Shown here: piece by piece, positions 7,218 through 35,546 of the stretch
Position numbering within the stretch: the first letter of the stretch is position 1
How the letters are laid out: each line of letters starts with the position of its first letter
NCBI RefSeq assembly: GCF_001194135.2
Contig: NC_068990.1
Span: 54,927,009-54,962,554, forward strand
Length of the DNA stretch: 35,546 bases
Direction of reading: 5' to 3'
Source: Octopus bimaculoides
Taxonomy: Eukaryota
The notes under the pieces: generated by a model
What the model was told of the DNA's origin: nothing
The model's input: the letters and a program-made list of their open reading frames with translations, nothing else
Database searches by the model: none
Program-made: the position numbers and the translations under genes

Positions 7218-7331
7218 CTATCTGCAGCAAGATTTTTTTGTTGGTTCTTGTTGGTTAGCATTAGCTAATTGAATGCGTTCTTTGTCTTCTTCTGTACTAC
7301 CTGTGTTCATATTTTGATCATTTTTGAGGAT
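7218..7331 (-). CDS. RAB32: Rab32/38 last coding exon with prenylation motif
   Basis: tttttttcctcctccag|ATC translates ILKNDQNMNTGSTEEDKERIQLANANQQEPTKKSCCR*. C-terminal CCX fits Rab geranylgeranylation. TAG at 7220-7218. Confidence 0.9.
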   Translation of the reverse strand: MLKNDQNMNTGSTEEDKERIQLANANQQEPTKKSCCR

Positions 7332-10178: not shown

Positions 10179-10322
10179 CTGTCCAACCAAAAATCGAGCA
10201 GCCTCATCTATGTTAATATTTTCTTTTGCTGAAGTTTCAAACCAACTCAGGAAACCTTTCTCTTTACAGAAATCATCCATCTGCTCTGTATTATTCACAA
10301 GGCCTTCTTTTGTTTGATCACA
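10179..10322 (-). CDS. RAB32: Rab32/38 coding exon (144 nt, G4 end and G5)
   Basis: ttccag|TGT...CAG|gtaatg translates CDQTKEGLVNNTEQMDDFCKEKGFLSWFETSAKENINIDEAARFLVGQ. Completes NKCD and contains ETSAK. Confidence 0.95.
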
Positions 10323-10811: not shown

Positions 10812-10849
<38 letters not shown>

Positions 10850-11080: not shown

Positions 11081-11283
11081 ATAAATGTAGTTATGTCTGA
11101 ACAGAAAGGAAATAGATATGAGCACTGGCGGAATGTTTTTTGATTTACAATTTTCTGTGGAGTCATGCATACATTTATACGCATGCAGAATATTTTGTAA
11201 GCATCTCAGACCACTTCTGGGTTTGTATATTTCCACACATAATGCACTTGTATGATAATGATAAAAAATAATTATTTATAATA

Positions 11284-11716: not shown

Positions 11717-11774
<58 letters not shown>

Positions 11775-12045
11775 ATCCTTTCTACTACTGCAAAGCATAT
11801 TGCCTGACACGCTACTGATTCTGCCAGCTCACTCCTTTCTACTATAGGCACAAGGCCTGAAATTTTGGGGGAGGGGGCTAGTCAATTACATTGACCTTAG
11901 TGTTTCATTGGTACTTAATTTATCAACCCCAAAAGGTTGAAAGGTAAAGTCGACCCTGGCAGAATTTGAACTCAAAACATAAAGATGGGCAAAATGCAGT
12001 TAAGCATCTTGCCCAGCGTGCTAATGATCCTACAAGCTTGCCACC

Positions 12046-12082
<37 letters not shown>

Positions 12083-12471
12083 TAGGCACATGGCCTGATA
12101 TTTTGGGGTGGGGGATAGTTGATTATATCAACCCCAGTACATGACTGGTATTTATTTCATTGAGCCTGAAAGGATGAAAGGTAAAAATTTGAACTACACA
12201 TTTTGTCTGGCATGATAACGATTCTGCCAGCTTATCACCTTCAATAATAATAATCTTTTCTACTAGGCACAAGGCCTGAAATTTTTGGGGAGGGGGCCAG
12301 TCTATTAGAGCGACCCCAGGACACAATTGGTACTTAATTTATCGACCCCGAAAGCATGAAAGGCAAAGTCGACCTCGGCAGAATTTGAACTCGGAATGTA
12401 AAGACAGATGAAATACCGCTAAGCATTATGCTCGGCATGCTAACGTTTCTGCTAGCTCACCACCTTCCTTC

Positions 12472-12513
<42 letters not shown>

Positions 12514-12704
12514 CCTTTCTACTAAAGGCACAAGGCCTGAAATTTGTGGGGAAGGCAATAGTTGATTACATCAACCCCAGTGTTTCACAGGTACTTAATT
12601 TATCGACCCCAAAGGGATGAACAGCAAAGTTGACCTCGGTGGAATTTGAACTCAGAATGTAATCATTTTGTCTGGCATGCTAACAATTCTACCAGCTCAC
12701 TATC
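11284..12704 (-). mobile_element. Head-to-tail array of about 7 copies or fragments of a tRNA-headed SINE (family c) separated by (AAT)n
   Basis: Repeated unit CTTTCTACTATAGGCACAAGGCCTGAAATT...GAAAGGCAAAGTCGACCTCGGCAGAATTTGAACTCAGAAC...CTGCCAGCTC. Its reverse complement has a B-box-like GAGTTCAAATTC and a core resembling the Deu/Nin SINE domain (from memory). Confidence 0.85.
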
Positions 12705-13427
12705 TTCAATAATAAAAATAATAATAATGATAATAATAACAAAATCGTTGTTGTTGTTGTTATTCAAACTAAACACACACTAACATCTTTAAATACCAAA
12801 TTTCACTAATCATATACATTCATCCACCTAGCTTTGACCCACTTCTATGATCCCATTAAGTTTCACCTTTTCTATTGTTCTCTTATTTCTCCACCTCTGA
12901 TTATTTCTTTCCTCCTTTTACTAATTCTTCTTCTTCATCCACTATTGCTTGTGCCTCCTTCTTACTCCTTATCATATTATGTTTCTATTACTCATAACTA
13001 CTAGTTAATCAGTTCAACCACAATGTATCTGAAAACTTATCATTACTTCATTGTGATGTATATTATTATCTAACTTGTGACTAGGTTTATATGTTTTTTA
13101 TGAAAAAATTAGAACAAATTCCATAACACAGTAGATTTTCTAAGTTTTCAAAATATTTGCCGTGCACAACTGAAATCTTTGTGGCTTTTCTTTTTCTTTT
13201 TTTTTTTATATTTTGTCATATTGCACTAGATTGCATTGTTTTTCAAATTCAAAAGCTTATATTATTTTTTGTAAGCTCCATAACAATCAATTGAATGTAG
13301 TATTTATATTTTTATAAATCTTCATAACTCTTTCTGTAGAATTTGATGTTTTTTTACATTTTGGCACAAGGCTAGCTATTTTGTGGGGAAAGGGGTATCA
13401 GTTACATCAACCCCTGTGCTCAATTAA

Positions 13428-13707
13428 CCCATTACCTCCCATAATTCTATTAACTGGAATTTTTTAATGAAACTTTGATTTCTAGCCTTAGAAACACGCT
13501 GGAATGATCAAAATAACATTTCAAAATAACATTTTAAATAGAAATAAGCGAGATATTGGGTGAAAAATTAGCAAACCTCATTTGAATATCAGAGAAATAT
13601 ACCTAGTAGATATAGTAAAATGGTTAGATATGTGTAAATATTGACAGATAATTACGAAATTTGTAATTTTTAAGTGATCTCATATGAGATCACTGGTAGG
13701 TAATGGG
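13428..13707. mobile_element. piggyBac-type MITE inserted into a SINE
   Basis: TTAA|CCCATTACCT...AGGTAATGGG|TTAA. The host SINE (about 13361-13850) resumes on both sides. Confidence 0.85.
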
Positions 13708-15166
13708 TTAATACTTATTTTATCGACCTCCAAAAAGACAAAAAGCAAATTTCCCCTCATCGAAATTTGAACTCAGGATGTGCAAGTGAAAGAAATTCTG
13801 CTGAGCATTTTGTTTGGCATGCTAACAACTCTACTAGCCTGGCACCTTTTAGAGAGCAATAATACTAAAAACATGTCTATAGCTGTCACACTGTTTGCTA
13901 ACAATGGTCAAATTTTTCATCTAAGAATGCAAATGAATTTCATGATAATGAATTTTAATTTTTTGGAATTATCTCCCCCTTCTCATTGAGAGCAGCTAAC
14001 AATTTCTGCTAGTTTTGTTTCCTTTCTTTAACTAAAACAAAAGTTTCAATCAATTGTTCAAAAGAGAGGGCAATTAAAGATGTACAATAGTAAGAGTGAG
14101 GGCACAAGGCCTTGTGGTTAGGTTGTTGCATTTGTGATCATAAGATAATGTTTTTGATTCACAGATCAGGCAGTGCGTTGTATTCTTGAGCAAAATGCTT
14201 CATTTCATGTTGCTCTGCGATCACTTCCAGCATGGAAAATGGACATTAAATGATGAAGATGATGGCACATATACAATTGTGCATATGCACACAAACATAC
14301 ATCTGTAAACATAAAAAACACATACACATTTGTAGACACACATCTGTGTACACACATCAGTATACACATGCACACATGCATACACATACATGTCTACACA
14401 CTTACAAATATATATTTTTTCAACTCTAGGCACAAGGCCCAAAATTTTTGGGGAGGGAGCCAGTCGATTAAATCAACCCCAGTATGCAACTGGTACTTAA
14501 TTTATCGAACATGAAAGGATGAAAGGCAAAGTCAACCTCAGCAGTATTTGAACTCAGAACATAAAGACAGACGAAATACCACTAAGCATTCTGCCTGGCA
14601 TATTAACGTTTCTGCCAGCTCACTGCTTTACACTTACAAATATATGAACCAGTGAGGAAAGCCTTTACCTAGTCACTTGACCCTGCTAGAAATAGAAACC
14701 AAATCTTCTTCAAATCACATATTACAAAAGGAAAGGGGAGAGAACATTAGAGAATGTAGCTCTCAATATCCTAAATAAATGCTATATTCACAGCTGGAAT
14801 AACTTTGGTTANNNNNNNNNNNNNNNNNNNNNNNNNNNNNNNNNNNNNNNNNNNNNNNNNNNNNNNNNNNNNNNNNNNNNNNNNNNNNNNNNNNNNNNNN
14901 NNNNNNNNNNNNNNNNNNNNNNNNNNNNNNNNNNNNNNNNNNNNNNNNNNNNNNNNNNNNNNNNNNNNNNNNNNNNNNNNNNNNNNNNNNNNNNNNNNNN
15001 NNNNNNNNNNNNNNNNNNNNNNNNNNNNNNNNNNNNNNNNNNNNNNNNNNNNNNNNNNNNNNNNNNNNNNNNNNNNNNNNNNNNNNNNNNNNNNNNNNNN
15101 NNNNNNNNNNNNNNNNNNNNNNNNNNNNNNNNNNNNNNNNNNNNNNNNNNNNNNNNNNNNNNNNNN

Positions 15167-15199
<33 letters not shown>

Positions 15200-15549
15200 A
15201 CAGGCTTCCTTCTACCAAATCTACTTACAAGGCTTTGGTTGGCCCAAGGCTATAATAGAAGACACTTGCCTAAGGTGCTGCACAGTGGGGCTGAACCCAG
15301 AACCATGTGGAAGTAAGCTTCTTATCACACAGCCACATCTGAACTCTTTGCAATTGAAAGGAAACGGTTGTGAAATTATTATGAATAGAATTGTGTGCAC
15401 ATATGAACTAATAACGTCCTGTATGTTTTGCCCCTCTGAAGGAATGAGTACCATTAGCCATACTCATAATAGCAGGTATAGCATCACAATTATACAAGTG
15501 AAATGAAGGAGGTTATCTCCCTCTACTTTCTCCCTATTAACCTTCTTAA

Positions 15550-15770
15550 CCCTTTAACTGCGAAATTAAATTTTATGGTTATTCCAGTAATGATGTTAGA
15601 TATTCACCCAAATTATAGAACTGGTATTTTCTGCAAGTCACATATCCTCTCAAAAATAGTTTCAAACATGACATTCCTTAACAAAAGATAGAATAGTATA
15701 TAAAACTGTTTTACACTGTGATGAATGATGAAACTTTGACAGAATATATCTGATCTCCACAGCAGAAGGG
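15550..15770. mobile_element. piggyBac-type MITE
   Basis: TTAA|CCCTT...AAGGG|TTAA with degenerate TIRs. Confidence 0.7.
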
Positions 15771-15889
15771 TTAAAACCAATAAGTAACACAGTATAATAT
15801 ACACAAGTCCTGTCTTATTTTAATGAATCCAATCTCATTATTGCTCACTTTTCATTTGTAAACTCCAACTTGGTTCTGTGTTACAAGAG

Positions 15890-16200
15890 AGGAGAAGATG
15901 GGAATAATAGAGAAAAGACGGGGAAGGGAGTATTAAAGAAACAAAGAAAATAATAAAGAACAAGAGGGAGGAAGTTATAAGGAAAAAACAAAGGAAGTTA
16001 TAAAGAGGAAGAAAATTTTAGAGAAAGAAAGAGAAAGTAATAGAGAGAGAGAGAGAGAGAGAGAGAGAAGGAGGAAGTAATAGAGAAAGAGAGGAATTGT
16101 AAATGGAAGAAGAAATAGACAGGATTGAGAGTAAGAAGAAAGAGAGAGCGAGAGTGTGTGTTTGTATATGTATGTCTGAAAGAGATACATTAAAAAGAAA
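15890..16200. repeat. Purine-rich low-complexity and (GA)n tract; other SSRs include (TAT)n/(CTT)n at 6270-6725, (CT)n at 16997-17070, (CAT)n at 26301-26376 and many (TA)n/(CA)n
   Basis: Read directly from the sequence. Confidence 0.9.
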
Positions 16201-16995
16201 AAGCTAAGATTCCTGACACTGCGTTTGATTGGCTTGATATAATTATAGCTTACTACAGACGTTCCTGTTCATCAGGCGACAATGTTACCCTTTCCTACAC
16301 ACACACACACACAACCCCAAACCTCACATCACTCTGAAAACTTGACAGAAATTACAGTTCATGGAAGAAAATCACTGCTTGTAGTTATGTCACTATGAAA
16401 GGTAGCAAGAGTAGAAGTAACAGTTCAACACTGCAGACAGTAAGTTGTGATGGTACACACAAATAATTACAACAGGTCACCAAATCAGCCATGGCATAAA
16501 TATTGGTATGACAAAGAATGGTTATGGTTGTGTCTTGTATGGCTTGTAATGGGTTAGTTAAATGATAGCGATAGTAGTATGTAGATGAGTGTCAGGTCTG
16601 TTATTAGCCTAATTAATTGATCGAAATAATGAAGCTAATTTACTAGTATTAGTGATTGTTATTTTAATTTTCAGACACGGTAGCAATGAAGATGACACTG
16701 CATAGAAAGAAATTGTCCAGATGCTTCTTTGCAGTGCTACACCTCAAAGAATTTGAATCACAAGAACTGTCTTTAGTTCCATCTCTCTGGTTAATAAATG
16801 AAATTCCTGTATAATATAATGGAAATGGGTTATACAGGCATGACTGTTTGGTGAAGGAAGGAGCTCACTTTCCAACCACATGGCTCTGGGTTCAGTCTCA
16901 TTCCAATGTGTGGCACTTCAGGCAAATGTCTTCTATTGTAGACCTGGACCAACTAATGCTTTGTGAATGAAAGCTGTAGACAGAACCTGTATGAG

Positions 16996-17074
<79 letters not shown>

Positions 17075-17159
17075 GTGCGTGTGTTTTTTTTTTTACATTT
17101 ATGAATTTGTCTTGCAAGATTCCTGATGTGAAATCATGTGTTGAAACAGGTATTGTTAT

Positions 17160-17552
17160 AGTTTATATGTGTAGTATTTAGGTTACATATATATATTGTT
17201 ATATTTTGGGATGGTCATTTTTTTTTCTTAAGAAATAAACACACACACTTGTTCACTTGTTTATTATTGTTCTTATTTTATGTGCTTTGTCTGAAAACCT
17301 TTTATCACACACTTGTGACCTCTTCAGCAACTCTGAACCCCATGTGTCTCACACTGGTATAGAGAGTCACTGAAGGGGTCACAGGTGCGTGATGAAAGAT
17401 TTCCAGACAATGGACATAAGATAAAATAAGAACAGTAATAAATGAGTGAAGAACAAACATAGTGTGTGTGTGTTTATTTAGCAAGAAAAAAAAATGACCA
17501 TCCCAAAATATAACAATATATATATGTAACCTAAATACTACACATATAAACT
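17160..17552. repeat. About 390-bp imperfect palindrome (foldback element)
   Basis: 17160-17229 is the perfect reverse complement of 17483-17552. Interior arms continue with mismatches to a loop near 17335-17360. Confidence 0.9.
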
Positions 17553-17824
17553 GGGTAAATTTAACTATTTCTCCACTGACTGAAAAAAAAATACTGAACA
17601 GCCATAATCATTTTCTGAACCTTATTGTGTTCTTATCCGAAGTGTTTACATCACGTGAATAATCCTTGAGAAATAAGCAGCCAATCTGTTTATATGCTCA
17701 ACAAATTCAGTAGCTACAGAGGACTGGAGCTGTTAATTTGCATACTGTAAGCATTTAACACTTTAATATCAGAGACTTGTCAATGGGGATCTCAGTCCAT
17801 TCAGTATCAAGGCATAATATAATA

Positions 17825-18035
17825 TGTGTAACTTATGTAGTATATTACCAAACCATTCAATTTTTTTTCTCCCTGTTTTTCTCCTTGTTTTCTCCATATT
17901 CTTTCTGTTGAAGAGCGTAGCTCGAAACGTTAAAGACTTTCTCTATTCCCGAACGTTAAACTAATACATCCTTTTGTTGTTTACACCACCTGTCCTCGTC
18001 TGTTGTTGTTTTTTTCGTAAATTCTCCCATATATA
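17825..18035 (+). mobile_element. Short repeat with a hammerhead-like motif, ending in (TA)n; Penelope-like terminus suspected
   Basis: TCTTT CTGTTGA A GAGC GTA GCTC GAAA CG TT AAAGA at 17900-17936. Confidence 0.5.
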
Positions 18036-21000
18036 ATACACGCTTACGTGGTTGCACCAGCTAATCCTGTCTCCACTCATCAAACACGAACTTCTGGATT
18101 CTACCTTCTTTCATTCTGGATTTACTCTTTCTGGACTGTTTTATTCTGAACTCTACACTCTCTGGCTGCACCTCTCCTACCCACGGATTACACTGGACCC
18201 ATCTTCTGATAGGAAATCGCCTCAATATACCACAACGTCTAAAACTTTTGAACTTNNNNNNNNNNNNNNNNNNNNNNNNNNNNNNNNNNNNNNNNNNNNN
18301 NNNNNNNNNNNNNNNNNNNNNNNNNNNNNNNNNNNNNNNNNNNNNNNNNNNNNNNNNNNNNNNNNNNNNNNNNNNNNNNNNNNNNNNNNNNNNNNNNNNN
18401 NNNNNNNNNNNNNNNNNNNNNNNNNNNNNNNNNNNNNNNNNNNNNNNNNNNNNNNNNNNNNNNNNNNNNNNNNNNNNNNNNNNNNNNNNNNNNNNNNNNN
18501 NNNNNNNNNNNNNNNNNNNNNNNNNNNNNNNNNNNNNNNNNNNNNNNNNNNNNNNNNNNNNNNNNNNNNNNNNNNNNNNNNNNNNNNNNNNNNNNNNNNN
18601 NNNNNNNNNNNNNNNNNNNNNNNNNNNNNNNNNNNNNNNNNNNNTATATATATATATATATATATATGTATAAGATATGAGGAGTTTTGATCAGGATGAC
18701 TCAACCAAATAGGTATGTGTTCTGAGTGTGCAAATAGGTGTGCCACCAAAATTCCAGTTAGAACAACATTTGAAGTTGTGGTTGTGTGATTATCTTATTT
18801 AAAAAAATGGTTGATGGTGACTTTGCTTTGAGCCAGTAGGTATAAGTTAAAGTAGTGAGGCAAGGCAAAGGTCGTGAGGAAAGGCAAAAGCAGTGAAAGA
18901 ATATCCTTGTCCTGCCTTGACTAATTGTTTGCCTTTCCTCACTACTATATACATATTCTTTTATTCTTTTACTTGTTTCAGTCATTTGACTGTGGCCATG
19001 CTGGAGCACCACCATTAGTCGAAGAAATCGACCCCAGAACTTATTCTTTGTAAGCCTCGTACTTATTCTATCGATCTTTTGTCAAACCGTTAAGTTACAG
19101 GGACGTAAACACACCAACATCAGTTGTCAAACAATAGTGGGACTCACATGCATATATATACAACAGGCCTCTTTCATGTTCCGTCTATCAAATCCACTCA
19201 CAAGGCTTTGGTCAGCCTGAGTCTATAGTAGAAGATACTTGCTCAAGGTCCTACATAGTGGGACTGAAACCACAATCATGTGGTTGGTAAGCAAGCTCCT
19301 TACCACACAGCCACTCCTGCACCTATATATGCATGTATGTATGTATGTATGTATGTATGTATCTATCTATCTATCTATCTATCTCTCTATATATATATAT
19401 ACAAAAATAAGAGGAGTGACCTGCAAAAGTGGACTCCTATATGCTAGAAATAGATGCCGAATCATCTAACCACGAGAAAAAATATATGTTCTCAGTAAAA
19501 TTGAGAACATATATTTTTCTCGTGGTTAGATGATTCNNNNNNNNNNNNNNNNNNNNNNNNNNNNNNNNNNNNNNNNNNNNNNNNNNNNNNNNNNNNNNNN
19601 NNNNNNNNNNNNNNNNNNNNNNNNNNNNNNNNNNNNNNNNNNNNNNNNNNNNNNNNNNNNNNNNNNNNNNNNNNNNNNNNNNNNNNNNNNNNNNNNNNNN
19701 NNNNNNNNNNNNNNNNNNNNNNNNNNNNNNNNNNNNNNNNNNNNNNNNNNNNNNNNNNNNNNNNNNNNNNNNNNNNNNNNNNNNNNNNNNNNNNNNNNNN
19801 NNNNNNNNNNNNNNNNNNNNNNNNNNNNATATATATATATATATAAACAAGGCAAATTTAACTATCTGAAACATTCTAGTATGAAAAGCAGACATCAAAT
19901 ACACTGATGATAGGAATGATTCTTGAACACCATAGCTGTTCCGTATATGTGCGTGGGTGTTTGTCCCTCCTCCACTATTTGACAAACCTGTAACTGAGCA
20001 GTTTGGCAAGACTTAAGATAAAAACGGACTAGGGATGATTTGTTTAACTAAACCCTTCAAGGCAATAGCCTGGCATGATCACAGTCCAATGACTGAAACA
20101 ATCAAAAGATAAAAGAAAATAGAGTAGTAATGAATAGTACTGATGGGGCTTTATACAGCTGCTGATTTGGCTGTAAACCTTCAAGTTCACTTATGCATGT
20201 GTAATATGCTGCTCACTTATACACATACACATATGTGTGTGTTGTGTGTGTGTGTGGAGGCACAATGGCCCAGTGGTTAGGGTAGCGGACTTGCAGTCAT
20301 AGGATCGCAGTTTCGATTCTCAGACCGGGCGTTGTAAGTGTTTATTGAGCAAAAACACCTAAGGCTCCACGAGGCTCCGGCAGGGGATGGTGGCGAACCC
20401 TGCTGTACTCTTTCACCACAACTTTCTCTCACTCTTACCTCCTGTTTCTGTTGTGCCTGTAATTCAAAGGGTCAGCCTTGTCACACTGTGTCACACTGAA
20501 TATCCCCNNNNNNNNNNNNNNNNNNNNNNNNNNNNNNNNNNNNNNNNNNNNNNNNNNNNNNNNNNNNNNNNNNNNNNNNNNNNNNNNNNNNNNNNNNNNN
20601 NNNNNNNNNNNNNNNNNNNNNNNNNNNNNNNNNNNNNNNNNNNNNNNNNNNNNNNNNNNNNNNNNNNNNNNNNNNNNNNNNNNNNNNNNNNNNNNNNNNN
20701 NNNNNNNNNNNNNNNNNNNNNNNNNNNNNNNNNNNNNNNNNNNNNNNNNNNNNNNNNNNNNNNNNNNNNNNNNNNNNNNNNNNNNNNNNNNNNNNNNNNN
20801 NNNNNNNNNNNNNNNNNNNNNNNNNNNNNNNNNNNNNNNNNNNNNNNNNNNNNNNNNNNNNNNNNNNNNNNNNNNNNNNNNNNNNNNNNNNNNNNNNNNN
20901 NNNNNNNNNNNNNNNNNNNNNNNNNNNNNNNNNNNNNNNNNNNNNNNNNNNNNNNNNNNNNNNNNNNNNNNNNNNNNNNNNNNNNNNNNNNNNNNNNNNN

Positions 21001-21312
21001 NNNNNNNNNNNNNNNNNNNNNNNNNNNNNNNNNNNNNNNNNNNNNNNNNNNNNNNNNNNNNNNNNNNNNNNNNNNNNNNNNNNNNNNNNNNNNNGTGATT
21101 GCTGTCAGCAGACTGTTTAGTTTAGTAGTAAAGTACTCAGCCAGTATCTCAGGGGTACAAGCTCAAGTCCTGTAGCCGTCTGCTGACAACTTTTTTCCTC
21201 TTGTAAGGGTAAAATATCCAATCTTTCTGCTGTTTTCACGGCTATACTGTGTTCAAAATTTACTTCCATGTCTATAATATATATATATTAATATATTCTG
21301 TTTTCAATTTGC

Positions 21313-21372
<60 letters not shown>

Positions 21373-21653
21373 TATATATATGCACACACACACACACACA
21401 CATATATATACATATATAAACATACTTTTAGTTCATGCAATTGAAAAAACTACATTATTTATGGGATGACCCAATATATATATATATATATACATATATA
21501 TATTAATAGTTATCGCCAAGCCAACATGGCAGTCNNNNNNNNNNNNNNNNNNNNNNNNNNNNNNNNNNNNNNNNNNNNNNNNNNNNNNNNNNNNNNNNNA
21601 GCTGCCGTGAATTAGCTCCAAGAAGCCATCGCCTCTAGCTAGCTATGTGACAC

Positions 21654-21714
<61 letters not shown>

Positions 21715-23174
21715 TATATATACATATATAAACATACTTTTCGTCCATGTTGGCTTGGCGGTAACTATTAATTTCCAGTACCGCTGCCGTAGTCTCCTTT
21801 AGAGAGACTTAGAAATATTAATAACTCTATTACATATATATATATATATATATATAATGGGCTTCTTTCAGTTTCTATCTACCAAATCTACTCACAAGAN
21901 NNNNNNNNNNNNNNNNNNNNNNNNNNNNNNNNNNNNNNNNNNNNNNNNNNNNNNNNNNNNNNNNNNNNNNNNNNNNNNNNNNNNNNNNNNNNNNNNNNNN
22001 NNNNNNNNNNNNNNNNNNNNNNNNNNNNNNNNNNNNNNNNNNNNNNNNNNNNNNNNNNNNNNNNNNNNNNNNNNNNNNNNNNNNNNNNNNNNNNNNNNNN
22101 NNNNNNNNNNNNNNNNNNNNNNNNNNNNNNNNNNNNNNNNNNNNNNNNNNNNNNNNNNNNNNNNNNNNNNNNNNNNNNNNNNNNNNNNNNNNNNNNNNNN
22201 NNNNNNNNNNNNNNNNNNNNNNNNNNNNNNNNNNNNNNNNNNNNNNNNNNNNNNNNNNNNNNNNNNNNNNNNNNNNNNNNNNNNNNNNNNNNNNNNNNNN
22301 NNNNNNNNNNNNNNNNNNNNNNNNNNNNNNNNNNNNNNNNNNNNNNNNNNNNNNNNNNNNNNNNNNNNNNNNNNNNNNNNNNNNNNNNNNNNNNNNNNNN
22401 NNNNNNNNNNNNNNNNNNNNNNNNNNNNNNNNNNNNNNNNNNNNNNNNNNNNNNNNNNNNNNNNNNNNNNNNNNNNNNNNNNNNNNNNNNNNNNNNNNNN
22501 NNNNNNNNNNNNNNNNNNNNNNNNNNNNNNNNNNNNNNNNNNNNNNNNNNNNNNNNNNNNNNNNNNNNNNNNNNNNNNNNNNNNNNNNNNNNNNNNNNNN
22601 NNNNNNNNNNNNNNNNNNNNNNNNNNNNNNNNNNNNNNNNNNNNNNNNNNNNNNNNNNNNNNNNNNNNNNNNNNNNNNNNNNNNNNNNNNNNNNNNNNNN
22701 NNNNNNNNNNNNNNNNNNNNNNNNNNNNNNNNNNNNNNNNNNNNNNNNNNNNNNNNTCCATGTTGGCTTGGCGGTAACTATTAATTTCCAGTACCGCTGC
22801 CGTAGTCTCCTTTAGAGAGACTTAGAAATATTAATAACTCTATTACATATATATATATATATATATATAATGGGCTTCTTTCAGTTTCTATCTACCAAAT
22901 CTACTCACAAGATTTTAGTCAGCCTGAGGTGCTATGCAGTGAGATTGAGTCCAGAACCATGTTGCTGGGACGCAAATTACATGTTAATTATGTATATATG
23001 TTTGCTTCTTTTTGCACTAGTGTGCATGTTTATACATATTTATGTGGGAGAATTTTAGAGAATTTACACACAAAATGTCTATGTATGAATGTGAATCTTT
23101 GATTGTGCTGAAATGAATATGGATACTTAAGGTTTGCATTTTTTGAGTATATTGTTCAGTAATTAAAGTTGTTA

Positions 23175-23470
23175 TTGGCGAAGGTTTGTGGTTTAGTAGT
23201 TAGGATATTCAGCTCATGAGTTTGATTCCCCCAGGGCACATTGTATCCTTGAACAAGACACTTTATTTCACATTGCTCCAGTCCACTCAGCTGGTGAAAA
23301 TGAGTAGAACCTGTATTTCAAAGGGCCAGCCTTGTCCCATTTTTTGTCATCCTGAATTATGTTAAGGATACACGTGTCTGTGGAGTGCTCAGTCACTTGT
23401 ACATTAATTTCATGAGTAGGTTGTTCCATTGATTGGATCAACTGGAACTCTCATTGTCATTGTCGACATA
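23175..23470 (+). mobile_element. tRNA-headed SINE family a, about 40 bp from the exon donor
   Basis: GTGGTTTAGTAGTTAGG...GAGTTTGATTCC...CAAGACACTTTATTTCACATTGCTCCAGTCCACTCAGCTGG...GATCAACTGGAAC. Related copies near 2005-2290 (-), 2375-2690 (+), 8050-8275 (-), 20258-20507 (+), 29995-30140 (+), 33068-33400 (-), 34093-34358 (-). Confidence 0.8.
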
Positions 23471-23509
23471 GTGTTAGAAAAAAAAAAAATTGATGAAATA
23501 TCGACTTAC

Positions 23510-23691
23510 CTTATTTGCTAGTAATACACATGGTATATTGCTGCCATCAGGTAACTGAACCTTACTGTCTAAGTCATTTTTCCATTTAACCACAGCCTCA
23601 AATGTTGGTACTCTTGTTACATCAAACACTACAAATGCTCCAACAGCCTCTTTATAGTACACTCGTGTCATGTTACCAAATCGTTCTTGAC
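23510..23691 (-). CDS. RAB32: Rab32/38 coding exon (182 nt, switch II to G4)
   Basis: ctgcag|GT CAA...AAT AAG|gtaagt translates (G)QERFGNMTRVYYKEAVGAFVVFDVTRVPTFEAVVKWKNDLDSKVQLPDGSNIPCVLLANK. Confidence 0.96.
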
Positions 23692-27273: not shown

Positions 27274-27352
27274 CTGCAATGTCCCATAATTGCAATCGGA
27301 TAAGTGTGTCAGCATCCCAACTAATGACTTTTAGTGCAAAATCAACACCTAT
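27274..27352 (-). CDS. RAB32: Rab32/38 coding exon (79 nt, not in the ORF track)
   Basis: tacag|ATA...GCA G|gtaaaa translates IGVDFALKVISWDADTLIRLQLWDIA(G). WDIAG instead of WDTAG is the Rab32/38/29 signature. Joins in frame with both neighbouring exons. Confidence 0.95.
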
Positions 27353-27514
27353 CTGTAGACAATGATTAAGGAAGTGAAATTAAAAGTAAGAAACCTGTAC
27401 AAAAGGAAATATCAAATTTTAAAATTGCTATTAATCGATAGATTCTGATGATTTGGAATAAGACTATAACATATCCTCCTCTTATTTTGACACGCAAGAA
27501 ATTTATATACATAT

Positions 27515-27906
27515 AAGTAATGTTTATTGCCACTTCAACATGGCTGTTCTGCAGGAATTGACATTACTATCATTTTACCTCCAGGAGGATGCCTCCTCCA
27601 GATGGTTATCCGATGCAATCTGCACTCGATATATATATATATATATATGTTGTGAGCTGGAGTGAACTACTGTTATCTCTAGTGGATGAGAATCCATTAC
27701 TGAGGATGAGCACAAAGAGCTCAAAACCGTATGGTCTAGTGGTCTCATGGCTGGAAGATGGTAGGAGTTCTCTTCCCTGCTTGCAATATATATCAGGTGC
27801 AGACTGCATGGAATAACCAACAGGAAAATGTGTCCTCCTGGAGTTAAAATGGTAGTAACATTGGTTCCTACAGAACAGCCATGTTTTGTGGCAATAAACA
27901 TCACTT
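27515..27906. repeat. Foldback element with about 120-bp diverged arms and a unique centre
   Basis: TGTTTATTGCCAC...CTGCACTCGATATAT versus ATATATCAGGTGCAG...GTGGCAATAAACA. Confidence 0.85.
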
Positions 27907-28099
27907 CTCAGTATAGTTATTGCTAATTTGCTTGTTATATATGCATATATATATATATATGTAAAAGGTTGAAGAGGAACACATGAGTAGATATATATGT
28001 GGAAAAAAGACAAGGTAGAAAATGCTAAAATACTTTTATAAAAACATTTCAGAACAGGTTTCAATCCTTGAGATCTTTCCAACTGTAAATAAGAATAAC

Positions 28100-28412
28100 A
28101 AATTTTGGAAAAATTAAATTTTGGCAAATTTAAATGAAACGTCTTTTTAAAAACATATTTGTATAGTCTTCAAATAACAGGGGCATTTCCCTTGTTTCTG
28201 TCTGTCTCTGTTTCTCTTGTTAACTCTTGTGGGTTTGACCTTGAACCCACAACAACCTCAAACCCACAACGACCTCGAACCCACAAGAGTTAACAAGAGA
28301 AACAGAGACAGACAGAAACAAGGGAAATGCCGCTGTTATTTGAATACTATACAAATATGTTTTAAAAAGACTTTTCATTTAAATTTGCCAAAATATAATT
28401 TTTCCAAAATTT
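28100..28412. repeat. Near-perfect inverted repeat (about 135-bp arms) with three 17-bp tandem units in the loop; runs into a gap
   Basis: 28100-28235 pairs with 28278-28412. Units GACCTTGAACCCACAAC, AACCTCAAACCCACAAC and GACCTCGAACCCACAAG at 28237-28287. Confidence 0.9.
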
Positions 28413-29750
28413 NNNNNNNNNNNNNNNNNNNNNNNNNNNNNNNNNNNNNNNNNNNNNNNNNNNNNNNNNNNNNNNNNNNNNNNNNNNNNNNNNNNNNNNN
28501 NNNNNNNNNNNNNNNNNNNNNNNNNNNNNNNNNNNNNNNNNNNNNNNNNNNNNNNNNNNNNNNNNNNNNNNNNNNNNNNNNNNNNNNNNNNNNNNNNNNN
28601 NNNNNNNNNNNNNNNNNNNNNNNNNNNNNNNNNNNNNNNNNNNNNNNNNNNNNNNNNNNNNNNNNNTATATATATAAATACACACACACACGCACACATA
28701 TATATATAAAACCATCATCATCATCACTTTCCATGATGGTATGGATTAGATAATTTGAGAGGAGCTGGCAAGCCAGAGGACAGTATCAAGCTCTGCCATT
28801 TGCTTTAGTATGGGTTTTACAGCTGGGAAGCCCTTATCAATACCAACTACATTACAGAGTGCAGTGGGTGCTTTTTACATGGCACCAGCTTCAGCAAGGT
28901 CATCAAGTAATTTGCAAGACACTCACCTCCTCATCCAAGGAAGGAGTAGTATTGAGGAGGTGGTTTAGTGTCAGGTGATAAGTTAAAGTATGATGGAGAG
29001 ATTAAAACAGATCTCAAGCTGTAGTGAACTGACACCCTGTACCTTTTTTTTTTTTTTGTAAGCCTGGTACTTTATTGGTCTCTTTATGCTGAACTGCTGA
29101 ACTACTAAGTTATGAGAATGTAAACACACACACTAGTTGTCAAGCAGTGGTGGGGGACAAACACAGACACAAAGATACAGACACACACACACACACACAC
29201 ATATACAATAAGCTTTTTACAGTTTCCATCCATCAAATCCACTAACAAATATAAAATTAGTGTACATTTAAACACAAAAGAAGCGACCCTTATATATATA
29301 TATATATATATGAAATCATTTGATGGGCTTCTTTCAGTTTCCATCCATGAAATCAAATTACAATGCTTTGGTTGGCCCAGGTCTTTCAAAGATAATGCTT
29401 TCCTAAGGTGCCACGCAGTGAGACCGAACCCAAAACCACGTTGTTCGAAAGCAAACTTCTTACCACACAGTCATGCCTGCACTTATGCATTTTAAAAATA
29501 TTAAATTTTGGCATGATGCCTGCAAAGTTAGTGGGAGAGATGAGCCAATTATATTGATCCCAGGGCTCAGCTGGTACATACTTTATCGACGCTGAAAGGA
29601 AGAAAGGCAAAGTTGAATCCTTTGCAAAATTTTAACTCAGAATACCAAGGGATAGAAGAAAGCTGCCTAGCATTTTGTCTGATATGTTAACAATTCTGTT
29701 AGCATGCTACCTTCAAATAACTAAAAATAATGTGATGATATAAAGGATAC

Positions 29751-29876
29751 AGTAGCTCGGTAATGTTGGGAGAAGAATTGATGGACATAACGTTTGATGA
29801 TACTTGTTTTTCCAGTTCCTAATTCTCCAATAACAAGAATCTTATATAAGTGTTCTTTCTTTTCAATCCCAGATGT
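29751..29876 (-). CDS. RAB32: Rab32/Rab38-family GTPase, first coding exon found (42 codons, P-loop and switch I)
   Basis: Acceptor ttttttcag|ACA. Translates TSGIEKKEHLYKILVIGELGTGKTSIIKRYVHQFFSQHYRAT with G1 GELGTGKTS. Phase-0 donor GTATCCTTT. Confidence 0.95.
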
Positions 29877-30482
29877 CTGAAAAAAAAAAAAAGAAAAGTA
29901 ACAAACATGATAAATATTGATAAACAAGGGAATTAAAATTCTTTTTTTTTTTATATATAACTAATCTTTTCTAAGCATATATCTATACACATGTGAAGGC
30001 ACATAGCCTGATGGCTAGGGTGTTTGCACTTATGATTGCAAGATCATGGTTTCAATTCCTGGACCACATGGTGTGTTGTGTTCTCAAGTAAAACACTTCA
30101 TTTCTCGTTGCTCCAGGCCACTCAGTTGTAAATGAGTCATTCCATTTAGGAGGAGGGGGGAATGTCATGATCTCAGTCATTTATGTATCATTGGCTTGCC
30201 TGCCTGCCTAGCCAATGGGGTGGCATTATTTGAAAGCTACAGCACTGCAAAGAAGTGCAGTCTGACCTGCAGTGTACAACAGCATTTGAATGTTTGGTTG
30301 ATACCATGATACAGATATCTATACACATATAACAGCTACCTTGATGGTATAAGTATGTTTTTGAGGGAAGTTCCCAAATAAGGTTTTCTCCAGCGTCAAA
30401 GGATTATTTGTTGTTAGAACTCTTCCGGGTGGGAGTTTTTGTGTTTTAATATTTCACTTGGGTATTGTGTAGAACTTAATAC

Positions 30483-30766
30483 GTGTATTGAATGATACAA
30501 ATTAGATTATATTCTTTTGAACACAGAATTGCCATTAGAACAGCAGAAATACTGGGTAAATTACCCTTACAAAACAGAAAAAATTGTCAACAACCAGCCA
30601 TAGGACATGAACCCATATCCCTCAAAGACTCCAGCTGAGTGCTTTACCATTAAGCTAAACTGCCTGCTGACAAATTCATGACTGGCTGTTGACAAATTTT
30701 TCCTGTTGTTCTAGTGGCAATTCAGCATTCAAAAAAATATCATCTAATTTGTATTGTTCAATACAC
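30483..30766. repeat. Inverted-repeat element enclosing a tRNA-like sequence
   Basis: GTGTATTGAATGATACAAATTAGAT...ATTGCCATTAGAACAGCAG versus CTGTTGTTCTAGTGGCAATT...ATCTAATTTGTATTGTTCAATACAC. Inner arms AAATTGTCAACA..CAGCCA / TGGCTGTTGACAAATT. Confidence 0.8.
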
Positions 30767-30827
30767 ATTTTAATGCTTATAAAACAAAACAAATGTTAGT
30801 TTGTTTATATTTATGCATATAATTAAT

Positions 30828-31000
30828 ATATGTATGTTTCAGAATGAAGTATTAGCTGATTATAGAGCAATAATAAGAAAGAGAGATGAAAAAGTGATGA
30901 ATGATTATCACATGAACTTCATCATTCATCCCTTTGTCATCTCTCTTTCTTATTACAACTTTATACTCAGCTAACACTTCATTCTGAAACATATGCATAT
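30828..31000. repeat. Hairpin with about 75-bp arms and a 15-nt loop
   Basis: ATGTTTCAGAATGAAGTATTAGCTGA...GATGAATGAT versus ATCATTCATC...TCAGCTAACACTTCATTCTGAAACAT. Confidence 0.85.
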
Positions 31001-32065
31001 TGAGATCTACACTGGGTTATTAGTCTCACAATACCTAAGAGAAATATTAAAACACATAACAGCTATTTAAAACCAACCAAACAAATAAACAATAAATTCA
31101 CCAAAACATATAAACAGGAAATCTCAAAATCTTAAAGAAAAACATATGAACATCAACATATCTACATACAGGCTAACATGAGGAATGTAAAGAAAAGTAA
31201 GAGGAAGTTATAATAAAACTTTTTTCTGAGAGTACAACTGATAAAAAGCAAATGGTAACAAACAAGGAATTAAAACCCAGACAAACTTAGATGTTGTTAA
31301 TATACTAACATTCCTCTTTGACTCTGTTTTGTCCATTTGTTTTTATTTGACACAACACCAATTTTTACAGTTAATTGAAGCATTATCATTATATCAATGA
31401 TGCTGTAAGAAACATTCTTCAAAATTACATTTGTTAAGGTTATTTCTATAGATTTTCTATAGAAATTATAGCCAGCACTATAATTTTTATAGAAAATCTG
31501 TACAGATGACCTTAACAAATGATATAATAGCACTGCTAACACAGTAGGACAGAATTTACTTATTTAAAAAAAACGTTTAATTTACTTATTTAAAAAAAAA
31601 ACGTTTAATATACTTTGCTTAATGAAATACAGTATCCTTACAAGTCACAAAAAGACACTGTTCCAAAAGAAATTTCTTAACTTTTCTTCATTTTAACATG
31701 AAGTCTGTCAATGTTTCACCAGGCAAGTAATTTTTGCGCTGAAACCATGATTTGAAACTAGAATGATTGCAGCATGAAAAGCACATATTAGCCATTCAAA
31801 GATATTAAAAGACTGTCAACTTCACTTAAACACTTATTATTTGGTGCCATGAGAGTATAGTCATGCAGATATACGAAGCAGCTATTTTGTCATAACTGCA
31901 AAGTTTATCTTTTCCCATGTTTGTATTCATTATTCATAGACCAACATAAAAAATAATATGTGCAGTTAATAAAACCCCAAACAACCACAATAGAGAAACA
32001 TCAATCCTTTGTGATAGTTCTGTCAAATTACAGCAGCTATTTCAGCATTACATAAACAAGGTGTA

Positions 32066-32113
<48 letters not shown>

Positions 32114-33484
32114 NNNNNNNNNNNNNNNNNNNNNNNNNNNNNNNNNNNNNNNNNNNNNNNNNNNNNNNNNNNNNNNNNNNNNNNNNNNNNNNNNNNNNNN
32201 NNNNNNNNNNNNNNNNNNNNNNNNNNNNNNNNNNNNNNNNNNNNNNNNNNNNNNNNNNNNNNNNNNNNNNNNNNNNNNNNNNNNNNNNNNNNNNNNNNNN
32301 NNNNNNNNNNNNNNNNNNNNNNNNNNNNNNNNNNNNNNNNNNNNNNNNNNNNNNNNNNNNNNNNNNNNNNNNNNNNNNNNNNNNNNNNNNNNNNNNNNNN
32401 NNNNNNNNNNNNNNNNNNNNNNNNNNNNNNNNNNNNNNNNNNNNNNNNNNNNNNNNNNNNNNNNNNNNNNNNNNNNNNNNNNNNNNNNNNNNNNNNNNNN
32501 NNNNNNNNNNNNNNNNNNNNNNNNNNNNNNNNNNNNNNNNNNNNNNNNNNNNNNNNNNNNNNNNNNNNNNNNNNNNNNNNNNNNNNNNNNNNNNNNNNNN
32601 NNNNNNNNNNNNNNNNNNNNNNNNNNNNNNNNNNNNNNNNNNNNNNNNNNNNNNNNNNNNNNNNNNNNNNNNNNNNNNNNNNNNNNNNNNNNNNNNNNNN
32701 NATATATATATATATATATAAGTAGTGGGGCTCTGAAAGGTGTCTCAGAGAGGAGTAGAGTCCCTGCTTTCCTGAGCTAGTTTTCCACCACATTTCTTAA
32801 AAATTGTGGTAGAGGCCTTGATTTCGGGACCACTCATGAGGTTGGGGGTAAGCAAGGGCATGCTCCCCATAGAAAATCCAGTTCCAAAAGAGCCTCGTGA
32901 TAGCAAAAGAGAATGGGCACCAGCCAGCCCAAAGGTTGGGGTGGGCTGCACCCGCCTACCTTGGTTGCTATGGCATTGAGGTAGATCCAGCCACACCCAT
33001 TAATGGGGACAAAACTTTGATTTAAAACACTGGATGATGATGATGATATATATATGTATGTATGTATGTATGTATGACCCCACCTCCTTTGGTCATGAAT
33101 GATTATGGGATTGCACCTAGAAAGTTCCCCTTCAAAAAACAAGCCCTGGCAAGGATGTTTATAGAAGGCCAGCAGTCACTCATGCATACCAGCCTCCCCT
33201 CTCCACACCACCGATGTTATCCAAGGGAGAGGCAAAGGCTGACGCAGCTTTGCACCAGTGATGTTGCAGCTCATCTCTACATCTAATTGAACTGGAGCAA
33301 CATGAAATAAAGTGTCTTGCTCAAGAATGCAACACACAACCTGATCCAGGAATCGAACTAACTGCCTCATGATTGTGTGTCCAATGCTCTAAGTCATACA
33401 CCTTCACAGATAAATATATATATATGTACATATAAACACACACACACACATATACATACACATGCACACACACACACACATATA

Positions 33485-34034
33485 CAGGGTGTCCCAAAAA
33501 GATGTACCTCACTCTTTGACGGATGATTACTAACGTATTGTTTTTTGTGATGTAAGGGCTTACCTCGATGCAACACATCCAAACAAATGGATTGGGAGGA
33601 GAGGTAGCATTGAATTTCCTGCACATTCCCCAGACCTCACGCTAATGGATTTTTTTTTTTTATGGGGACATCTCAAAGATAAGGTTTACGCTGCAAAACC
33701 AGTGACAATTGATGATTTGAAAAATGAAATTCAAATACAATGTCTTGCAATTCCAAATGAAATGTTTGGCAATGTTGTTAAATCCATTGTTGGACATTAT
33801 CAGCTTTGTTTGGAAAATGAAGGAAGGCAGTTTGAACATTTGCGAACAGGCAGGAATGAGAGAGAACATTAAATAATTCTAAATGACAATAAATAATCGT
33901 TTCTACAACAATTTATTTTCCTGAATTTAATTTAACTTTTTAGGATTGTATGTATATCAATAAACATCTACTTGAAAACAAAATGCATGAGTACAGGAAG
34001 TCAAAGAGTGAGTACATCTTTTTGGGACACCCTG
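33485..34034 (+). mobile_element. Internally deleted Tc1/mariner-superfamily element (550 bp) with transposase C-terminal remnant
   Basis: About 35-bp TIRs CAGGGTGTCCCAAAAAGATGTAC(C)TCACTCTTTGAC with TA on both flanks. 33546-33872 reads CDVRAYLDATHPNKWIGRRGSIEFPAHSPDLTLMDFFFLWGHLKDKVY..., including the SPDL motif. Confidence 0.92.
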
Positions 34035-34038
34035 TATA

Positions 34039-34092
<54 letters not shown>

Positions 34093-34521
34093 GTGGCACT
34101 CTGTTGGTTACAATGACAAGGTTTCCAGTTGATCTGATCAATGGAACAGCCTGCTGGTGAAATTAACGTGCAAGTGGCTGAGCACTCCACAGACACGTGT
34201 ACCCTTAAGGTAGTTCTCAGGGACATTCAGCATGACACACTGCGTGACAAGGCTGGCCCCTTTGAAATACAGGTACAACAGAAACAGGAAGAAAGAGTGA
34301 GAGAAAGTTGTGGTGAAAGAGTACAGCAGGGTTCGCCACCATCCCTGCTCGAGCCTCATCTAGCTTCATTTACAAATTATGCAACATCAAAATAAGGAGA
34401 AACAACCACACACACACACATTATATATCATGGGCTTCTTTCAGTTTCCATCTATGAAATCCACTCACAAGGTTTTGATTGGTCTCATAGTCACTTTGAT
34501 TACACAGCGACACCTGCACTT

Positions 34522-34872
34522 ATTACCTCCATCTTAGCAAAGGCAGAGGTATTGTTTTCAGTTGTGTTTGTTTGTTTGTCCATGGACAAGATATCTCAAG
34601 AACCACTGGATGGATATGGATGAAACTTTCAGAGATGTTTATCCTAGTGACTGGCACAAACTGATCGATCTGGCATCAGACAAGGATTCTGGATTATTTT
34701 TCCTTTTTTTTTACTTAATTTTTGAGAGTGGTCTGGTTCATTATTAGTATTCTCATTTGTGAGAGCAGTCGAGTTTATTTCAGATATTCTCATTTAAAAA
34801 ATCATCTCTGGTTAATCATTGAGAGGACGTTGGTGTTGCCTTGGCGGAAGTTTGCACTCTCTGAGTGCTCTT
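34522..34872. mobile_element. Non-autonomous element resembling Helentron-associated (HINE-like) repeats; related inverted fragments near 140-310 and 950-1100
   Basis: Terminal hairpin TACCTCC..C...G..GAGGTA, short (GTTT)n, subterminal CCTTGGCGGA. GGACAAGATATCTCAAGAACCACTGGATGGAT is the reverse complement of about 1027-1058. Classification is from memory. Confidence 0.45.
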
Positions 34873-35326
34873 GCATTAATATTACTGTTGGTTTCTAATT
34901 TTGGCATAAGGCCAGCAATTTCAGGGAGAGGATAAATTGATTACATTGACCCCAATGCTTAAATGGTACTTATTTCGTTGCCTGCAAAAGGTTGCAAAGC
35001 AAAATCAGCCTCAGCAGAATTTGAACTCAGAACATAAAGACTGACAAAATGCTGCTAAACATTTTGCCTGGCATGCTAATGATTCTGCCAGCTTGCTGAC
35101 TTATATATCAATATTAATACTTTTTTACTCTTTTACTTGTTTCAGTCATTTGACTGCGGCCATGCTGGAGCACTGCCTTTATTCGAGAAAATCGAGCCCA
35201 GAACTTATTCTTTATAAGCCTAGTATTTATTCTATCGGTCTCTTTTTACCGAACCGCTAAGTTACAGGGACGTAAACACACCAGCATCGGTTGTCAAGCG
35301 ATGGTGGGGGGACAAACACAGACACA

Positions 35327-35396
<70 letters not shown>

Positions 35397-35546
35397 TATT
35401 ATTAGGGACAAAATCCAAAATTACAGGTAAAAAACTCAATTAAAATCAATTTATAAAAAATTGAAATTAAATTGAGCCTTATAGATAAAGTATATATAAA
35501 ATATATATAGTTTTAGGGAAAATAACCAATTTTCAAGAACTCATCG

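What the first reader, a model, noticed from the sequence alone, without database searches (positions are those of the whole stretch)
27353..29750. U12-type (minor spliceosome) intron in the switch I region of Rab32/38
Seen: donor GTATCCTTT, branch TTCCTTAAT 13-14 nt from TACAG, and no polypyrimidine tract. The other three introns have ordinary U2-type ends (GTAAAA, GTAAGT, GTAATG). Established: RTATCCTT plus TTCCTTAAY defines U12 introns, which are rare and can be rate-limiting. Inference: expression of this lysosome-related-organelle and pigment-granule Rab depends on the minor spliceosome. The intron splits HYRAT|IGVDF at phase 0, and the short downstream exon is missing from the ORF track.
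Basis: partly seen in the sequence, partly recalled or inferred. Interest (0 to 1): 0.72.

Follow-up and report, generated by a model that had tools for sequence, protein, structure and literature searches.

The report
Ancient U12-type intron in Rab32
The intron is a textbook minor-spliceosome (U12-type) intron in a Rab32/38 GTPase gene. The same intron sits at the same codon in sponge, annelid, limpet and amphioxus, but is gone from the vertebrate RAB32a/RAB38 and dragonfly genes checked, so it is a real, modest addition to a well-known class.

Summary
On the minus strand, exon 29876-29751 (...HYRAT) is followed by GTATCCTTT. TTCCTTAAT lies at 27373-27365, 12 nt before the CAG that precedes exon 27352-27274 (IGVDF...WDIAG). 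The intron is phase 0.

The assembly gap (28413-28666) is wholly intronic and more than 1 kb from either splice signal. It leaves the intron length unknown but does not affect frame or signals.

I built a substitute PWM from 77 published human minor introns. The 5' splice site scores 16.3 bits, the best of 3,589 GT sites in the window. The branch site scores 9.4 bits, in the top 0.6% of AG sites. The gene's other three introns score -14 to -19.

The same phase-0 position carries GTATCCTT and a branch motif close to the U12 consensus in Patella, Owenia, Branchiostoma and the sponge Sycon. Among Rab32-type metagenome contigs, one lineage has the AT-AC form: 6 of 6 AT introns end in AC, and 24 of 24 GT introns end in AG. 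The intron is absent from skate and chinchilla RAB38, teleost rab32a and a dragonfly.

Published human and mouse minor-intron gene lists lack RAB32, RAB38 and RAB29. No paper I searched mentions this intron.

Verdict: a genuine U12 intron, ancestral to animals and lost in some lineages. It is a new member of a known kind. Any regulatory or rate-limiting role is untested.

The parts
29751..29876 (-). Rab32 coding exon 2 (TSGIEKKEHLYKILVIGELGTGKTSIIKRYVHQFFSQHYRAT). It holds the P-loop and ends at the switch I Thr. Its acceptor is preceded by a 20-nt pyrimidine run.
29742..29750 (-). U12-type 5' splice site GTATCCTTT. The exon -2/-1 bases are CT, not AG.
   Evidence: PWM 16.3 bits, the best of 3,589 GT sites in the window.
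27353..29750 (-). U12-type GT-AG intron, phase 0. Nominal length 2,398 nt, of which 254 are N.
28413..28666 (.). Assembly gap, wholly intronic. A (TG)n(TA)n microsatellite lies on one side and a 138-nt-arm foldback (28101-28412) abuts the other.
27365..27373 (-). U12-type branch-point sequence TTCCTTAAT. The branch adenosines are 13-14 nt from the 3' splice site.
   Evidence: PWM 9.4 bits, in the top 0.6% of AG sites.
27353..27354 (-). 3' splice site AG (TACAG|ATA).
27274..27352 (-). Exon 3, 79 nt (IGVDFALKVISWDADTLIRLQLWDIA + first base of G). It ends in phase 1 with the U2-type donor GTAAAA.
23510..23691 (-). Exon 4 (GQERFGNMTR...VLLANK), donor GTAAGT.
10179..10322 (-). Exon 5 (CDQTKEG...RFLVGQ), donor GTAATG. 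It follows a 13.2-kb intron that contains seven gaps.
7218..7331 (-). Last coding exon (ILKNDQNMNTGSTEEDKERIQLANANQQEPTKKSCCR + stop). It carries the C-terminal double cysteine for prenylation.

Best explanation
The 29750-27353 interval (minus strand) is a canonical GT-AG U12-type intron of a Rab32/38 orthologue.

Inferred mechanism, from the established minor-spliceosome pathway:
- The U11/U12 di-snRNP binds both signals together. U11, and later U6atac, pairs with the 5' splice site ATCCTT. U12 pairs with TTCCTTAAT and bulges a branch adenosine 13-14 nt from the 3' splice site.
- U4atac/U6atac.U5 then catalyses the joining of the Thr codon ACT to the Ile codon ATA. This rebuilds the switch I / RabF1 sequence ...HYRAT-IGVDF...
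- If the intron is not removed, translation reads nine intronic codons (VSFISSHYF) and stops. No functional GTPase can be made, so the gene depends on the minor spliceosome.

Shown here: the sequence signals, the exon structure, and the fact that the intron is an ancestral animal U12 intron. It sits at the identical phase-0 position with U12 signals in a sponge, an annelid, a gastropod and amphioxus, and occurs in AT-AC form in another lineage. It has been deleted exactly in the vertebrate rab32a/RAB38 genes and the dragonfly gene examined.

Not shown: actual splicing in this species, and any kinetic or regulatory role.
For: - Sequence read directly.
- The exon chain reproduces a complete Rab32 core with GT-AG at every junction.
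- cDNA contigs of a related species (94% aa identity) pass from exon 2 directly into exon 3.
- The motifs are rare by chance; the joint chance is about 2e-6.
- Substitute PWM built from 77 human minor introns (PMC6717393 Table S2). The 5' splice site scores 16.3 bits (human minor introns: median 13.4, max 16.5) and is the top GT site of the window. The branch site scores 9.4 bits (human range 3.8-15.3). The gene's other three introns score -13.6 to -19.4 at the 5' splice site. The 12-mer ACTGTATCCTTT is identical to human introns scored 100 in that table.
- The same position and phase carries GTATCCTT plus a branch motif within one mismatch of TCCTTRAY, 12-18 nt from the 3' splice site, in Patella, Owenia, Branchiostoma and Sycon. 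The neighbouring shared introns are ordinary U2-type.
- 38 Rab32-type metagenome contigs carry the junction. 6 of 6 AT-start introns end in AC and 24 of 24 GT-start introns end in AG.
- The exon -2/-1 bases are CT, not the AG that marks 'minor-like' introns (PMC11347168).
- The defining criteria and the 11-13 nt optimum distance come from PMC3584512.
Against: - There is no RNA evidence from this species.
- The intron contains an unresolved gap.
- intronIC itself was not run.
- No minor snRNA gene could be looked for beyond this 35-kb window.
- The 'no polypyrimidine tract' criterion does not discriminate in this AT-rich gene.
Confidence: 0.93

Rival explanations
1. The intron carries U12-like motifs but is removed, wholly or partly, by the major (U2-type) spliceosome. 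That would make it a 'minor-like' or hybrid intron on the way to conversion.
For: - It has GT-AG termini, and GT-AG U12 introns can convert with few mutations (PMC3584512; PMC11347168).
- Pyrimidine content upstream of the acceptor is as high as at two U2-type acceptors of the same gene.
Against: - Both signals are at or near full consensus.
- The exon end is CT, not AG (criterion).
- The U2-type consensus GTRAGT is absent from the donor.
- The motifs are held over the whole span of animal evolution, and an AT-AC variant exists at the same site. That is not expected for a drifting hybrid.
Confidence: 0.04
2. The locus is not a working gene as drawn. It could be a mis-scaffolded join across the gap or a decaying copy, so the 29751/27352 junction is never made.
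For: - The window has nine gaps, one of them inside this intron.
- A foldback ends exactly at the gap edge.
- The start-codon exon was not found.
- No 100%-identical protein was returned by the database search.
Against: - All five coding exons found are colinear, on one strand and in frame, with intact GT-AG sites and no stop codons.
- They are 91-94% identical to expressed orthologues.
- The exon order and all four intron positions match those of Patella, Branchiostoma and Sycon.
Confidence: 0.02
3. The match is a coincidence and the intron is an ordinary U2-type intron.
For: Each 8-mer occurs a few times in the window by chance. A chance GTATCCTTAAC lies at 23361-23371.
Against: - The joint chance at the homology-fixed boundaries is about 2e-6.
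- The donor is identical in four other phyla at the same codon.
- The termini covary between AT-AC and GT-AG.
Confidence: 0.01

Closest known systems
U12-type (minor-spliceosome) GT-AG introns, as defined in SpliceRack, intronIC/IAOD and MIDB
   Same: - 5' splice site GTATCCTTT.
- Branch site TTCCTTAAT, 13-14 nt from the 3' splice site.
- GT-AG termini and no exonic AG at -2/-1.
- Strong conservation of type across orthologues, with AT-AC/GT-AG subtype switching between lineages.
- Loss by exact deletion in some clades.
   Different: Nothing in its structure differs. Only the host gene is not among those discussed in the papers searched.
Known mammalian Rab-family minor-intron genes: RAB6A, RAB6B, RAB41, RABL2A/B (PMC6717393 tables)
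   Same: They are small GTPases of the Rab family with a GT-AG U12 intron. The RAB6A 5' splice site is ACAGTATCCTTT in one species and ATAGTATCCTTT in the other, with a CTTAAC-type branch site.
   Different: It is a different Rab subfamily. The RAB6A exon end (ACA in one species, ATA in the other) cannot be the invariant Thr codon in phase 0, so its position is probably not the same. I could not check this. RAB32, RAB38 and RAB29 are absent from those lists.
Vertebrate RAB32 and RAB38
   Same: They are orthologous proteins (about 80% identity; 4CYM at E=1e-93). They share the phase-1 intron inside WDIA|G.
   Different: Their first coding exon runs uninterrupted from Met to WDIAG, so the U12 intron is missing in skate rab38b, chinchilla RAB38 and teleost rab32a. 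The LLANK|CDQ intron is missing as well.

Membership tests
U12-type intron | 5' splice site matching RTATCCTT from intron position +1 | tested here: met
   GTATCCTTT at 29750-29742. It scores 16.3 bits on a PWM built from 77 human minor introns and is the top GT site in the window.
U12-type intron | Branch-point sequence matching TCCTTRAY | tested here: met
   TTCCTTAAT at 27373-27365. It scores 9.4 bits, within the human minor-intron range of 3.8-15.3 and in the top 0.6% of AG sites.
U12-type intron | Short distance from branch site to 3' splice site (optimum 11-13 nt; PMC3584512) | tested here: met
   The branch adenosines are 13-14 nt from the last intron base. This is at the upper edge of the optimum.
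U12-type intron | Terminal dinucleotides of one subtype (GT-AG or AT-AC, not mixed) | tested here: met
   The window intron is GT...AG. In related contigs, 24 of 24 GT introns end in AG and 6 of 6 AT introns end in AC.
U12-type intron | No AG at exon positions -2/-1 (separates 'minor' from 'minor-like'; PMC11347168) | tested here: met
   The exon ends ...GCTACT, so -2/-1 is CT.
U12-type intron | No distinct polypyrimidine tract | tested here: inconclusive
   Only 12 nt separate the branch site from the AG, and the longest pyrimidine run is 7. However, the pyrimidine fraction of 0.72 equals or exceeds that of two U2-type acceptors of the same gene.
U12-type intron | Orthologous introns keep the U12 type | tested here: met
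   Patella, Owenia, Branchiostoma and Sycon have the same phase-0 position with GTATCCTT plus a branch motif within one mismatch of TCCTTRAY.
U12-type intron | Removal by U11/U12/U4atac/U6atac, and a spliced junction seen in RNA of this species | not testable with these tools
   The only RNA support is cDNA contigs of another species. The Rfam scan of the window found no snRNA, which is expected for 35 kb.
Rab32/38 subfamily of Rab GTPases | Closest similarity to Rab32/38 over the whole G domain | tested here: met
   The top 120 hits are Rab-32/38-like. Solved structures match in the order RAB32 4CYM 1e-93, RAB38 6S5H 1e-90, RAB29 5e-61, RAB7 about 1e-36. The Pfam Ras family matches at 4.6e-42.
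Rab32/38 subfamily of Rab GTPases | P-loop, the switch I Thr, RabF1 IGVDF, the subfamily's WDIAGQE (rather than WDTAGQE), and C-terminal prenylation cysteines | tested here: met
   GELGTGKT, HYRAT, IGVDF, WDIAGQERF and ...KKSCCR are all present in the assembled translation. The motif definitions come from established Rab literature, recalled from memory.

The most novel reading that the evidence does not exclude
The Rab32 U12 intron is more than a neutrally retained relic. In invertebrates it would act as a conserved control point that ties the making of lysosome-related organelles and pigment granules to minor-spliceosome activity. Its exact deletion before the vertebrate RAB32/RAB38 duplication would then have released the gene from that control. 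A bolder form of the idea is that the intron predates animals.
Probability: 0.1. Interest if true: 0.55.

Novelty: new member of a known kind. Interest (0 to 1): 0.3.

Why it matters
- It adds Rab32 to the genes whose expression needs the minor spliceosome in many invertebrates. Rab32 is the regulator of melanosome-like and other lysosome-related organelles.
- The intron dates to the base of animals and was lost in the vertebrate and insect genes examined. That explains why human and mouse minor-intron gene lists do not contain it.
- For annotators, the 79-nt exon 3 after this intron is easy to miss.
- For evolutionary work on minor introns, it is a clean case of conservation, AT-AC/GT-AG subtype switching and exact loss within one gene.
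- It does not reveal any new mechanism.

Tried and rejected
- **First coding exon.** I searched 29877-35546 for the Met exon by ORF listing and by blastn/tblastn with the related cDNA and protein. It was not found. It may lie in gap 32114-32701 or beyond the window. Without it, the exact protein could not be looked up for same-species transcripts.
- **Genomic look-ups that failed.** The two insect isoforms P0083 and P0108 were not on record. The Crassostrea look-up returned only transcript contigs.
- **Literature.** 'U12-type' with Rab32 and 'minor intron' with RAB38 both gave 0 papers. The supplements held for the two pan-eukaryote surveys contain no gene tables.
- **Naming the AT-AC lineage.** No contig carries the whole gene, so no exact protein look-up was possible.
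- **Same position as the RAB6A minor intron.** I considered this and think it unlikely, because the RAB6A exon end differs (ACA/ATA) between mouse and human. I could not verify it.
- **Polypyrimidine argument.** Tested and found not to discriminate.
- **Other features in the window.** The Rfam tRNA hits were not confirmed by ARAGORN. A Pfam scan of a transposase-looking ORF was negative.
- One of the 77 branch-site 12-mers I copied for the PWM had a typing error and was dropped, so 76 were used.

Full report
**What is at the coordinates.** The gene lies on the minus strand.
- Reading 29950-27200 shows an exon with a strong acceptor (a 20-nt pyrimidine run, then CAG). It encodes TSGIEKKEHLYKILVIGELGTGKTSIIKRYVHQFFSQHYRAT and ends at 29751.
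- The next nine bases are GTATCCTTT (29750-29742).
- TTCCTTAAT is at 27373-27365. Twelve bases later comes the AG at 27354-27353.
- Exon 3 starts at 27352 and encodes IGVDFALKVISWDADTLIRLQLWDIAG.

**The rest of the gene.** A simple spliced-alignment script fixed the remaining exons, with donors GTAAAA, GTAAGT and GTAATG:

| Exon | Coordinates (minus strand) |
|---|---|
| 3 | 27352-27274 |
| 4 | 23691-23510 |
| 5 | 10322-10179 |
| last | 7331-7218 |

- The start-codon exon was not found in the window.
- The assembled product is a Rab32/38 orthologue. The best 120 database hits are Rab-32/38-like, with 91% identity to several gastropods and 94% to an unnamed transcriptome contig.
- The closest solved structures are human RAB32 (4CYM, E=1e-93) and RAB38. 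Pfam gives the Ras family.
The nearest named proteins are molluscan.

**The gap, tested first.** The N run at 28413-28666 lies entirely inside the intron, 1,084 nt from the donor and 1,060 nt from the acceptor.
- Frame is therefore irrelevant.
- A cDNA contig from a related species (L001, about 80% nucleotide identity) aligns to 29873-29748 and then directly to 27352-27269. No coding exon is hidden in the gap.
- Exon order and strand match the orthologous genes.
- Continuity of the two flanks cannot be proven, and the intron's true length is unknown.
- The gap is flanked by a (TG)n(TA)n run on one side and by a foldback that ends exactly at its edge on the other. That is the usual reason for an assembly break.

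**Is it more than chance?**
- Each 8-mer is expected about three times in the window on both strands.
- The fraction of GT sites followed by ATCCTT is 1.4e-3. The fraction of AG sites with TCCTTRAY 8-21 nt upstream is 1.3e-3. For a GT/AG pair whose positions are dictated by protein homology, the joint chance is about 2e-6.

**A substitute for intronIC.** intronIC was not available. I built PWMs from 77 human minor-intron 5' splice sites and 76 branch sites printed in Table S2 of PMC6717393. I then scored the window with them.

| Site | Score (bits) | Comparison |
|---|---|---|
| 5' splice site ACT\|GTATCCTTT | 16.3 | human minor introns, leave-one-out: median 13.4, max 16.5; best of all 3,589 GT sites in the window |
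| branch site ACTTCCTTAATC | 9.4 | human range 3.8-15.3; top 0.6% of AG sites |
| the gene's other three donors | -13.6 to -19.4 | ordinary U2-type |

- The same 12-mer, ACTGTATCCTTT, occurs in human introns scored 100 in that table.
- The exon ends in CT, not the AG that marks the 'minor-like' class (PMC11347168).
- The 13-14 nt spacing is at the upper edge of the 11-13 nt optimum (PMC3584512).
Pyrimidine content at -20..-3 is 0.72, against 0.61 and 0.72 for two U2-type acceptors of the same gene.

**Orthologues.** I fetched genomic loci of annotated orthologues and mapped their introns (analysis).
- Four intron positions are shared widely: HYRAT|IGVDF (phase 0), WDIA|G (phase 1), LLANK|CDQ (phase 0) and LV..|IL (phase 0).
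- At the first position the signals are:

| Species | Donor | Branch motif | Distance to 3' splice site |
|---|---|---|---|
| Patella vulgata (gastropod) | GTATCCTTT | TCTTTAAT | 12 nt |
| Owenia fusiformis (annelid) | GTATCCTTT | TACTTAAC | 13 nt |
| Branchiostoma floridae (amphioxus) | GTATCCTTT | TCCCTGAC | 14 nt |
| Sycon ciliatum (sponge) | GTATCCTTG | TTCCTTAAC | 18 nt |

- In the same genes, the other introns have ordinary, unconserved U2-type ends.
- The intron is absent where the exon runs uninterrupted across HYRATIGVDF. That is the case in skate rab38b, chinchilla RAB38, teleost rab32a and the dragonfly Ladona fulva. The dragonfly keeps the other three positions.

**A wider scan.** I scanned metagenome contigs for HYRAT codons followed by RTATCCTT.
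- There were 43 hits, of which 38 are Rab32-type exons.
- These donors were selected by the pattern, so they are not independent evidence. The 3' ends are independent.
- 24 of 24 GT-start introns end in AG. 6 of 6 AT-start introns end in AC, with TTCCTTAAC or ACCTTGAC 10 nt upstream. So one lineage carries the AT-AC subtype at this very position.
- That lineage shares an extra FGNMTR|VYY intron with the sponge, so it is probably non-bilaterian. This is an inference.
- Such covariation of termini and subtype switching is characteristic of U12 introns.

**Mechanism and consequence.** The inferred mechanism is standard: cooperative U11/U12 recognition of the two signals, followed by U4atac/U6atac.U5 catalysis. 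If the intron is retained, the frame reads VSFISSHYF and stops. The product would then end just after switch I. The gene therefore needs the minor spliceosome. Whether this step is slow or regulated (Patel et al., cited in PMC3584512) was not and could not be tested.

**What is known.**
- Molluscs are relatively rich in minor introns (PMC10639083).
- Human and mouse minor-intron gene tables list RAB6A, RAB6B, RAB41, RABL2 and RABGGTA, but not RAB32, RAB38 or RAB29. This agrees with the absence I found in vertebrates.
- No paper in the library pairs U12 or minor introns with Rab32/38.
- Automatic catalogues probably already contain this intron for annotated invertebrate genomes.

**Verdict.** The finding is a clean, ancient member of a well-understood class that has been lost in some lineages. 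It is not a new kind of element. Interest is modest.

Noticed in passing
window 28100-28412: A long foldback, with 138-nt arms (83% complementary) and 53-nt outer arms (96% complementary), whose outer arm ends exactly at the edge of the assembly gap. It is either a hairpin-forming repeat that broke the assembly or an assembly artefact.
   Followed up: partly
window 27497-27924: A second inverted-repeat element inside the U12 intron. Its arms are about 100 nt and 37 nt (78-80% complementary) and it spans about 430 nt, like a miniature inverted-repeat transposon.
   Followed up: no
L012 10107-10175 and L013 9147-9212 (Branchiostoma): Inside the amphioxus U12 intron there is a tandem copy of the last ~55 nt of the upstream exon (KTSIIKRYVH.FFSQHYRAT) together with a second GTATCCTTC donor, about 165 nt downstream of the real one. 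It is present in both assemblies. It is a decoy or alternative U12 5' splice site of unknown use.
   Followed up: partly
L023, L026, L035, L039, L045, L048, L049, L056 (metagenome contigs): Rab32 genes of an unidentified host lineage have the same intron in AT-AC form (ATATCCTTT...CCTTAAC or CCTTGAC...AC). They also have an extra intron after FGNMTR that is shared with the sponge Sycon.
   Followed up: partly
window 23361-23371 (minus strand): GTATCCTTAAC, a fused donor-plus-branch-like string, lies about 140 nt into the U2-type intron after exon 4. It looks like chance and has no partner signals.
   Followed up: no
window 30592-30664 (-) and 21111-21181 (+): Two weak Rfam tRNA matches (31-32 bits) that ARAGORN does not call. 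They are probably tRNA-derived repeat (SINE-like) copies.
   Followed up: partly
window 33645-33872 (+): A 75-aa ORF (MDFFFLWGHLKDKVY...FEHL) that, from memory, resembles the C-terminal end of mariner-type transposases. The Pfam scan gave no hit.
   Followed up: partly
window 10323-23509: The 13.2-kb intron between exons 4 and 5 contains seven assembly gaps, and part of it has very low G+C. Its length and content are unreliable.
   Followed up: no
PMC6717393 Table S2 (not in the window): The mammalian RAB6A/RAB6B/RAB41 genes carry a GT-AG minor intron. Whether its position relates to the Rab32 one was not checked. The exon-end bases suggest that it does not.
   Followed up: no
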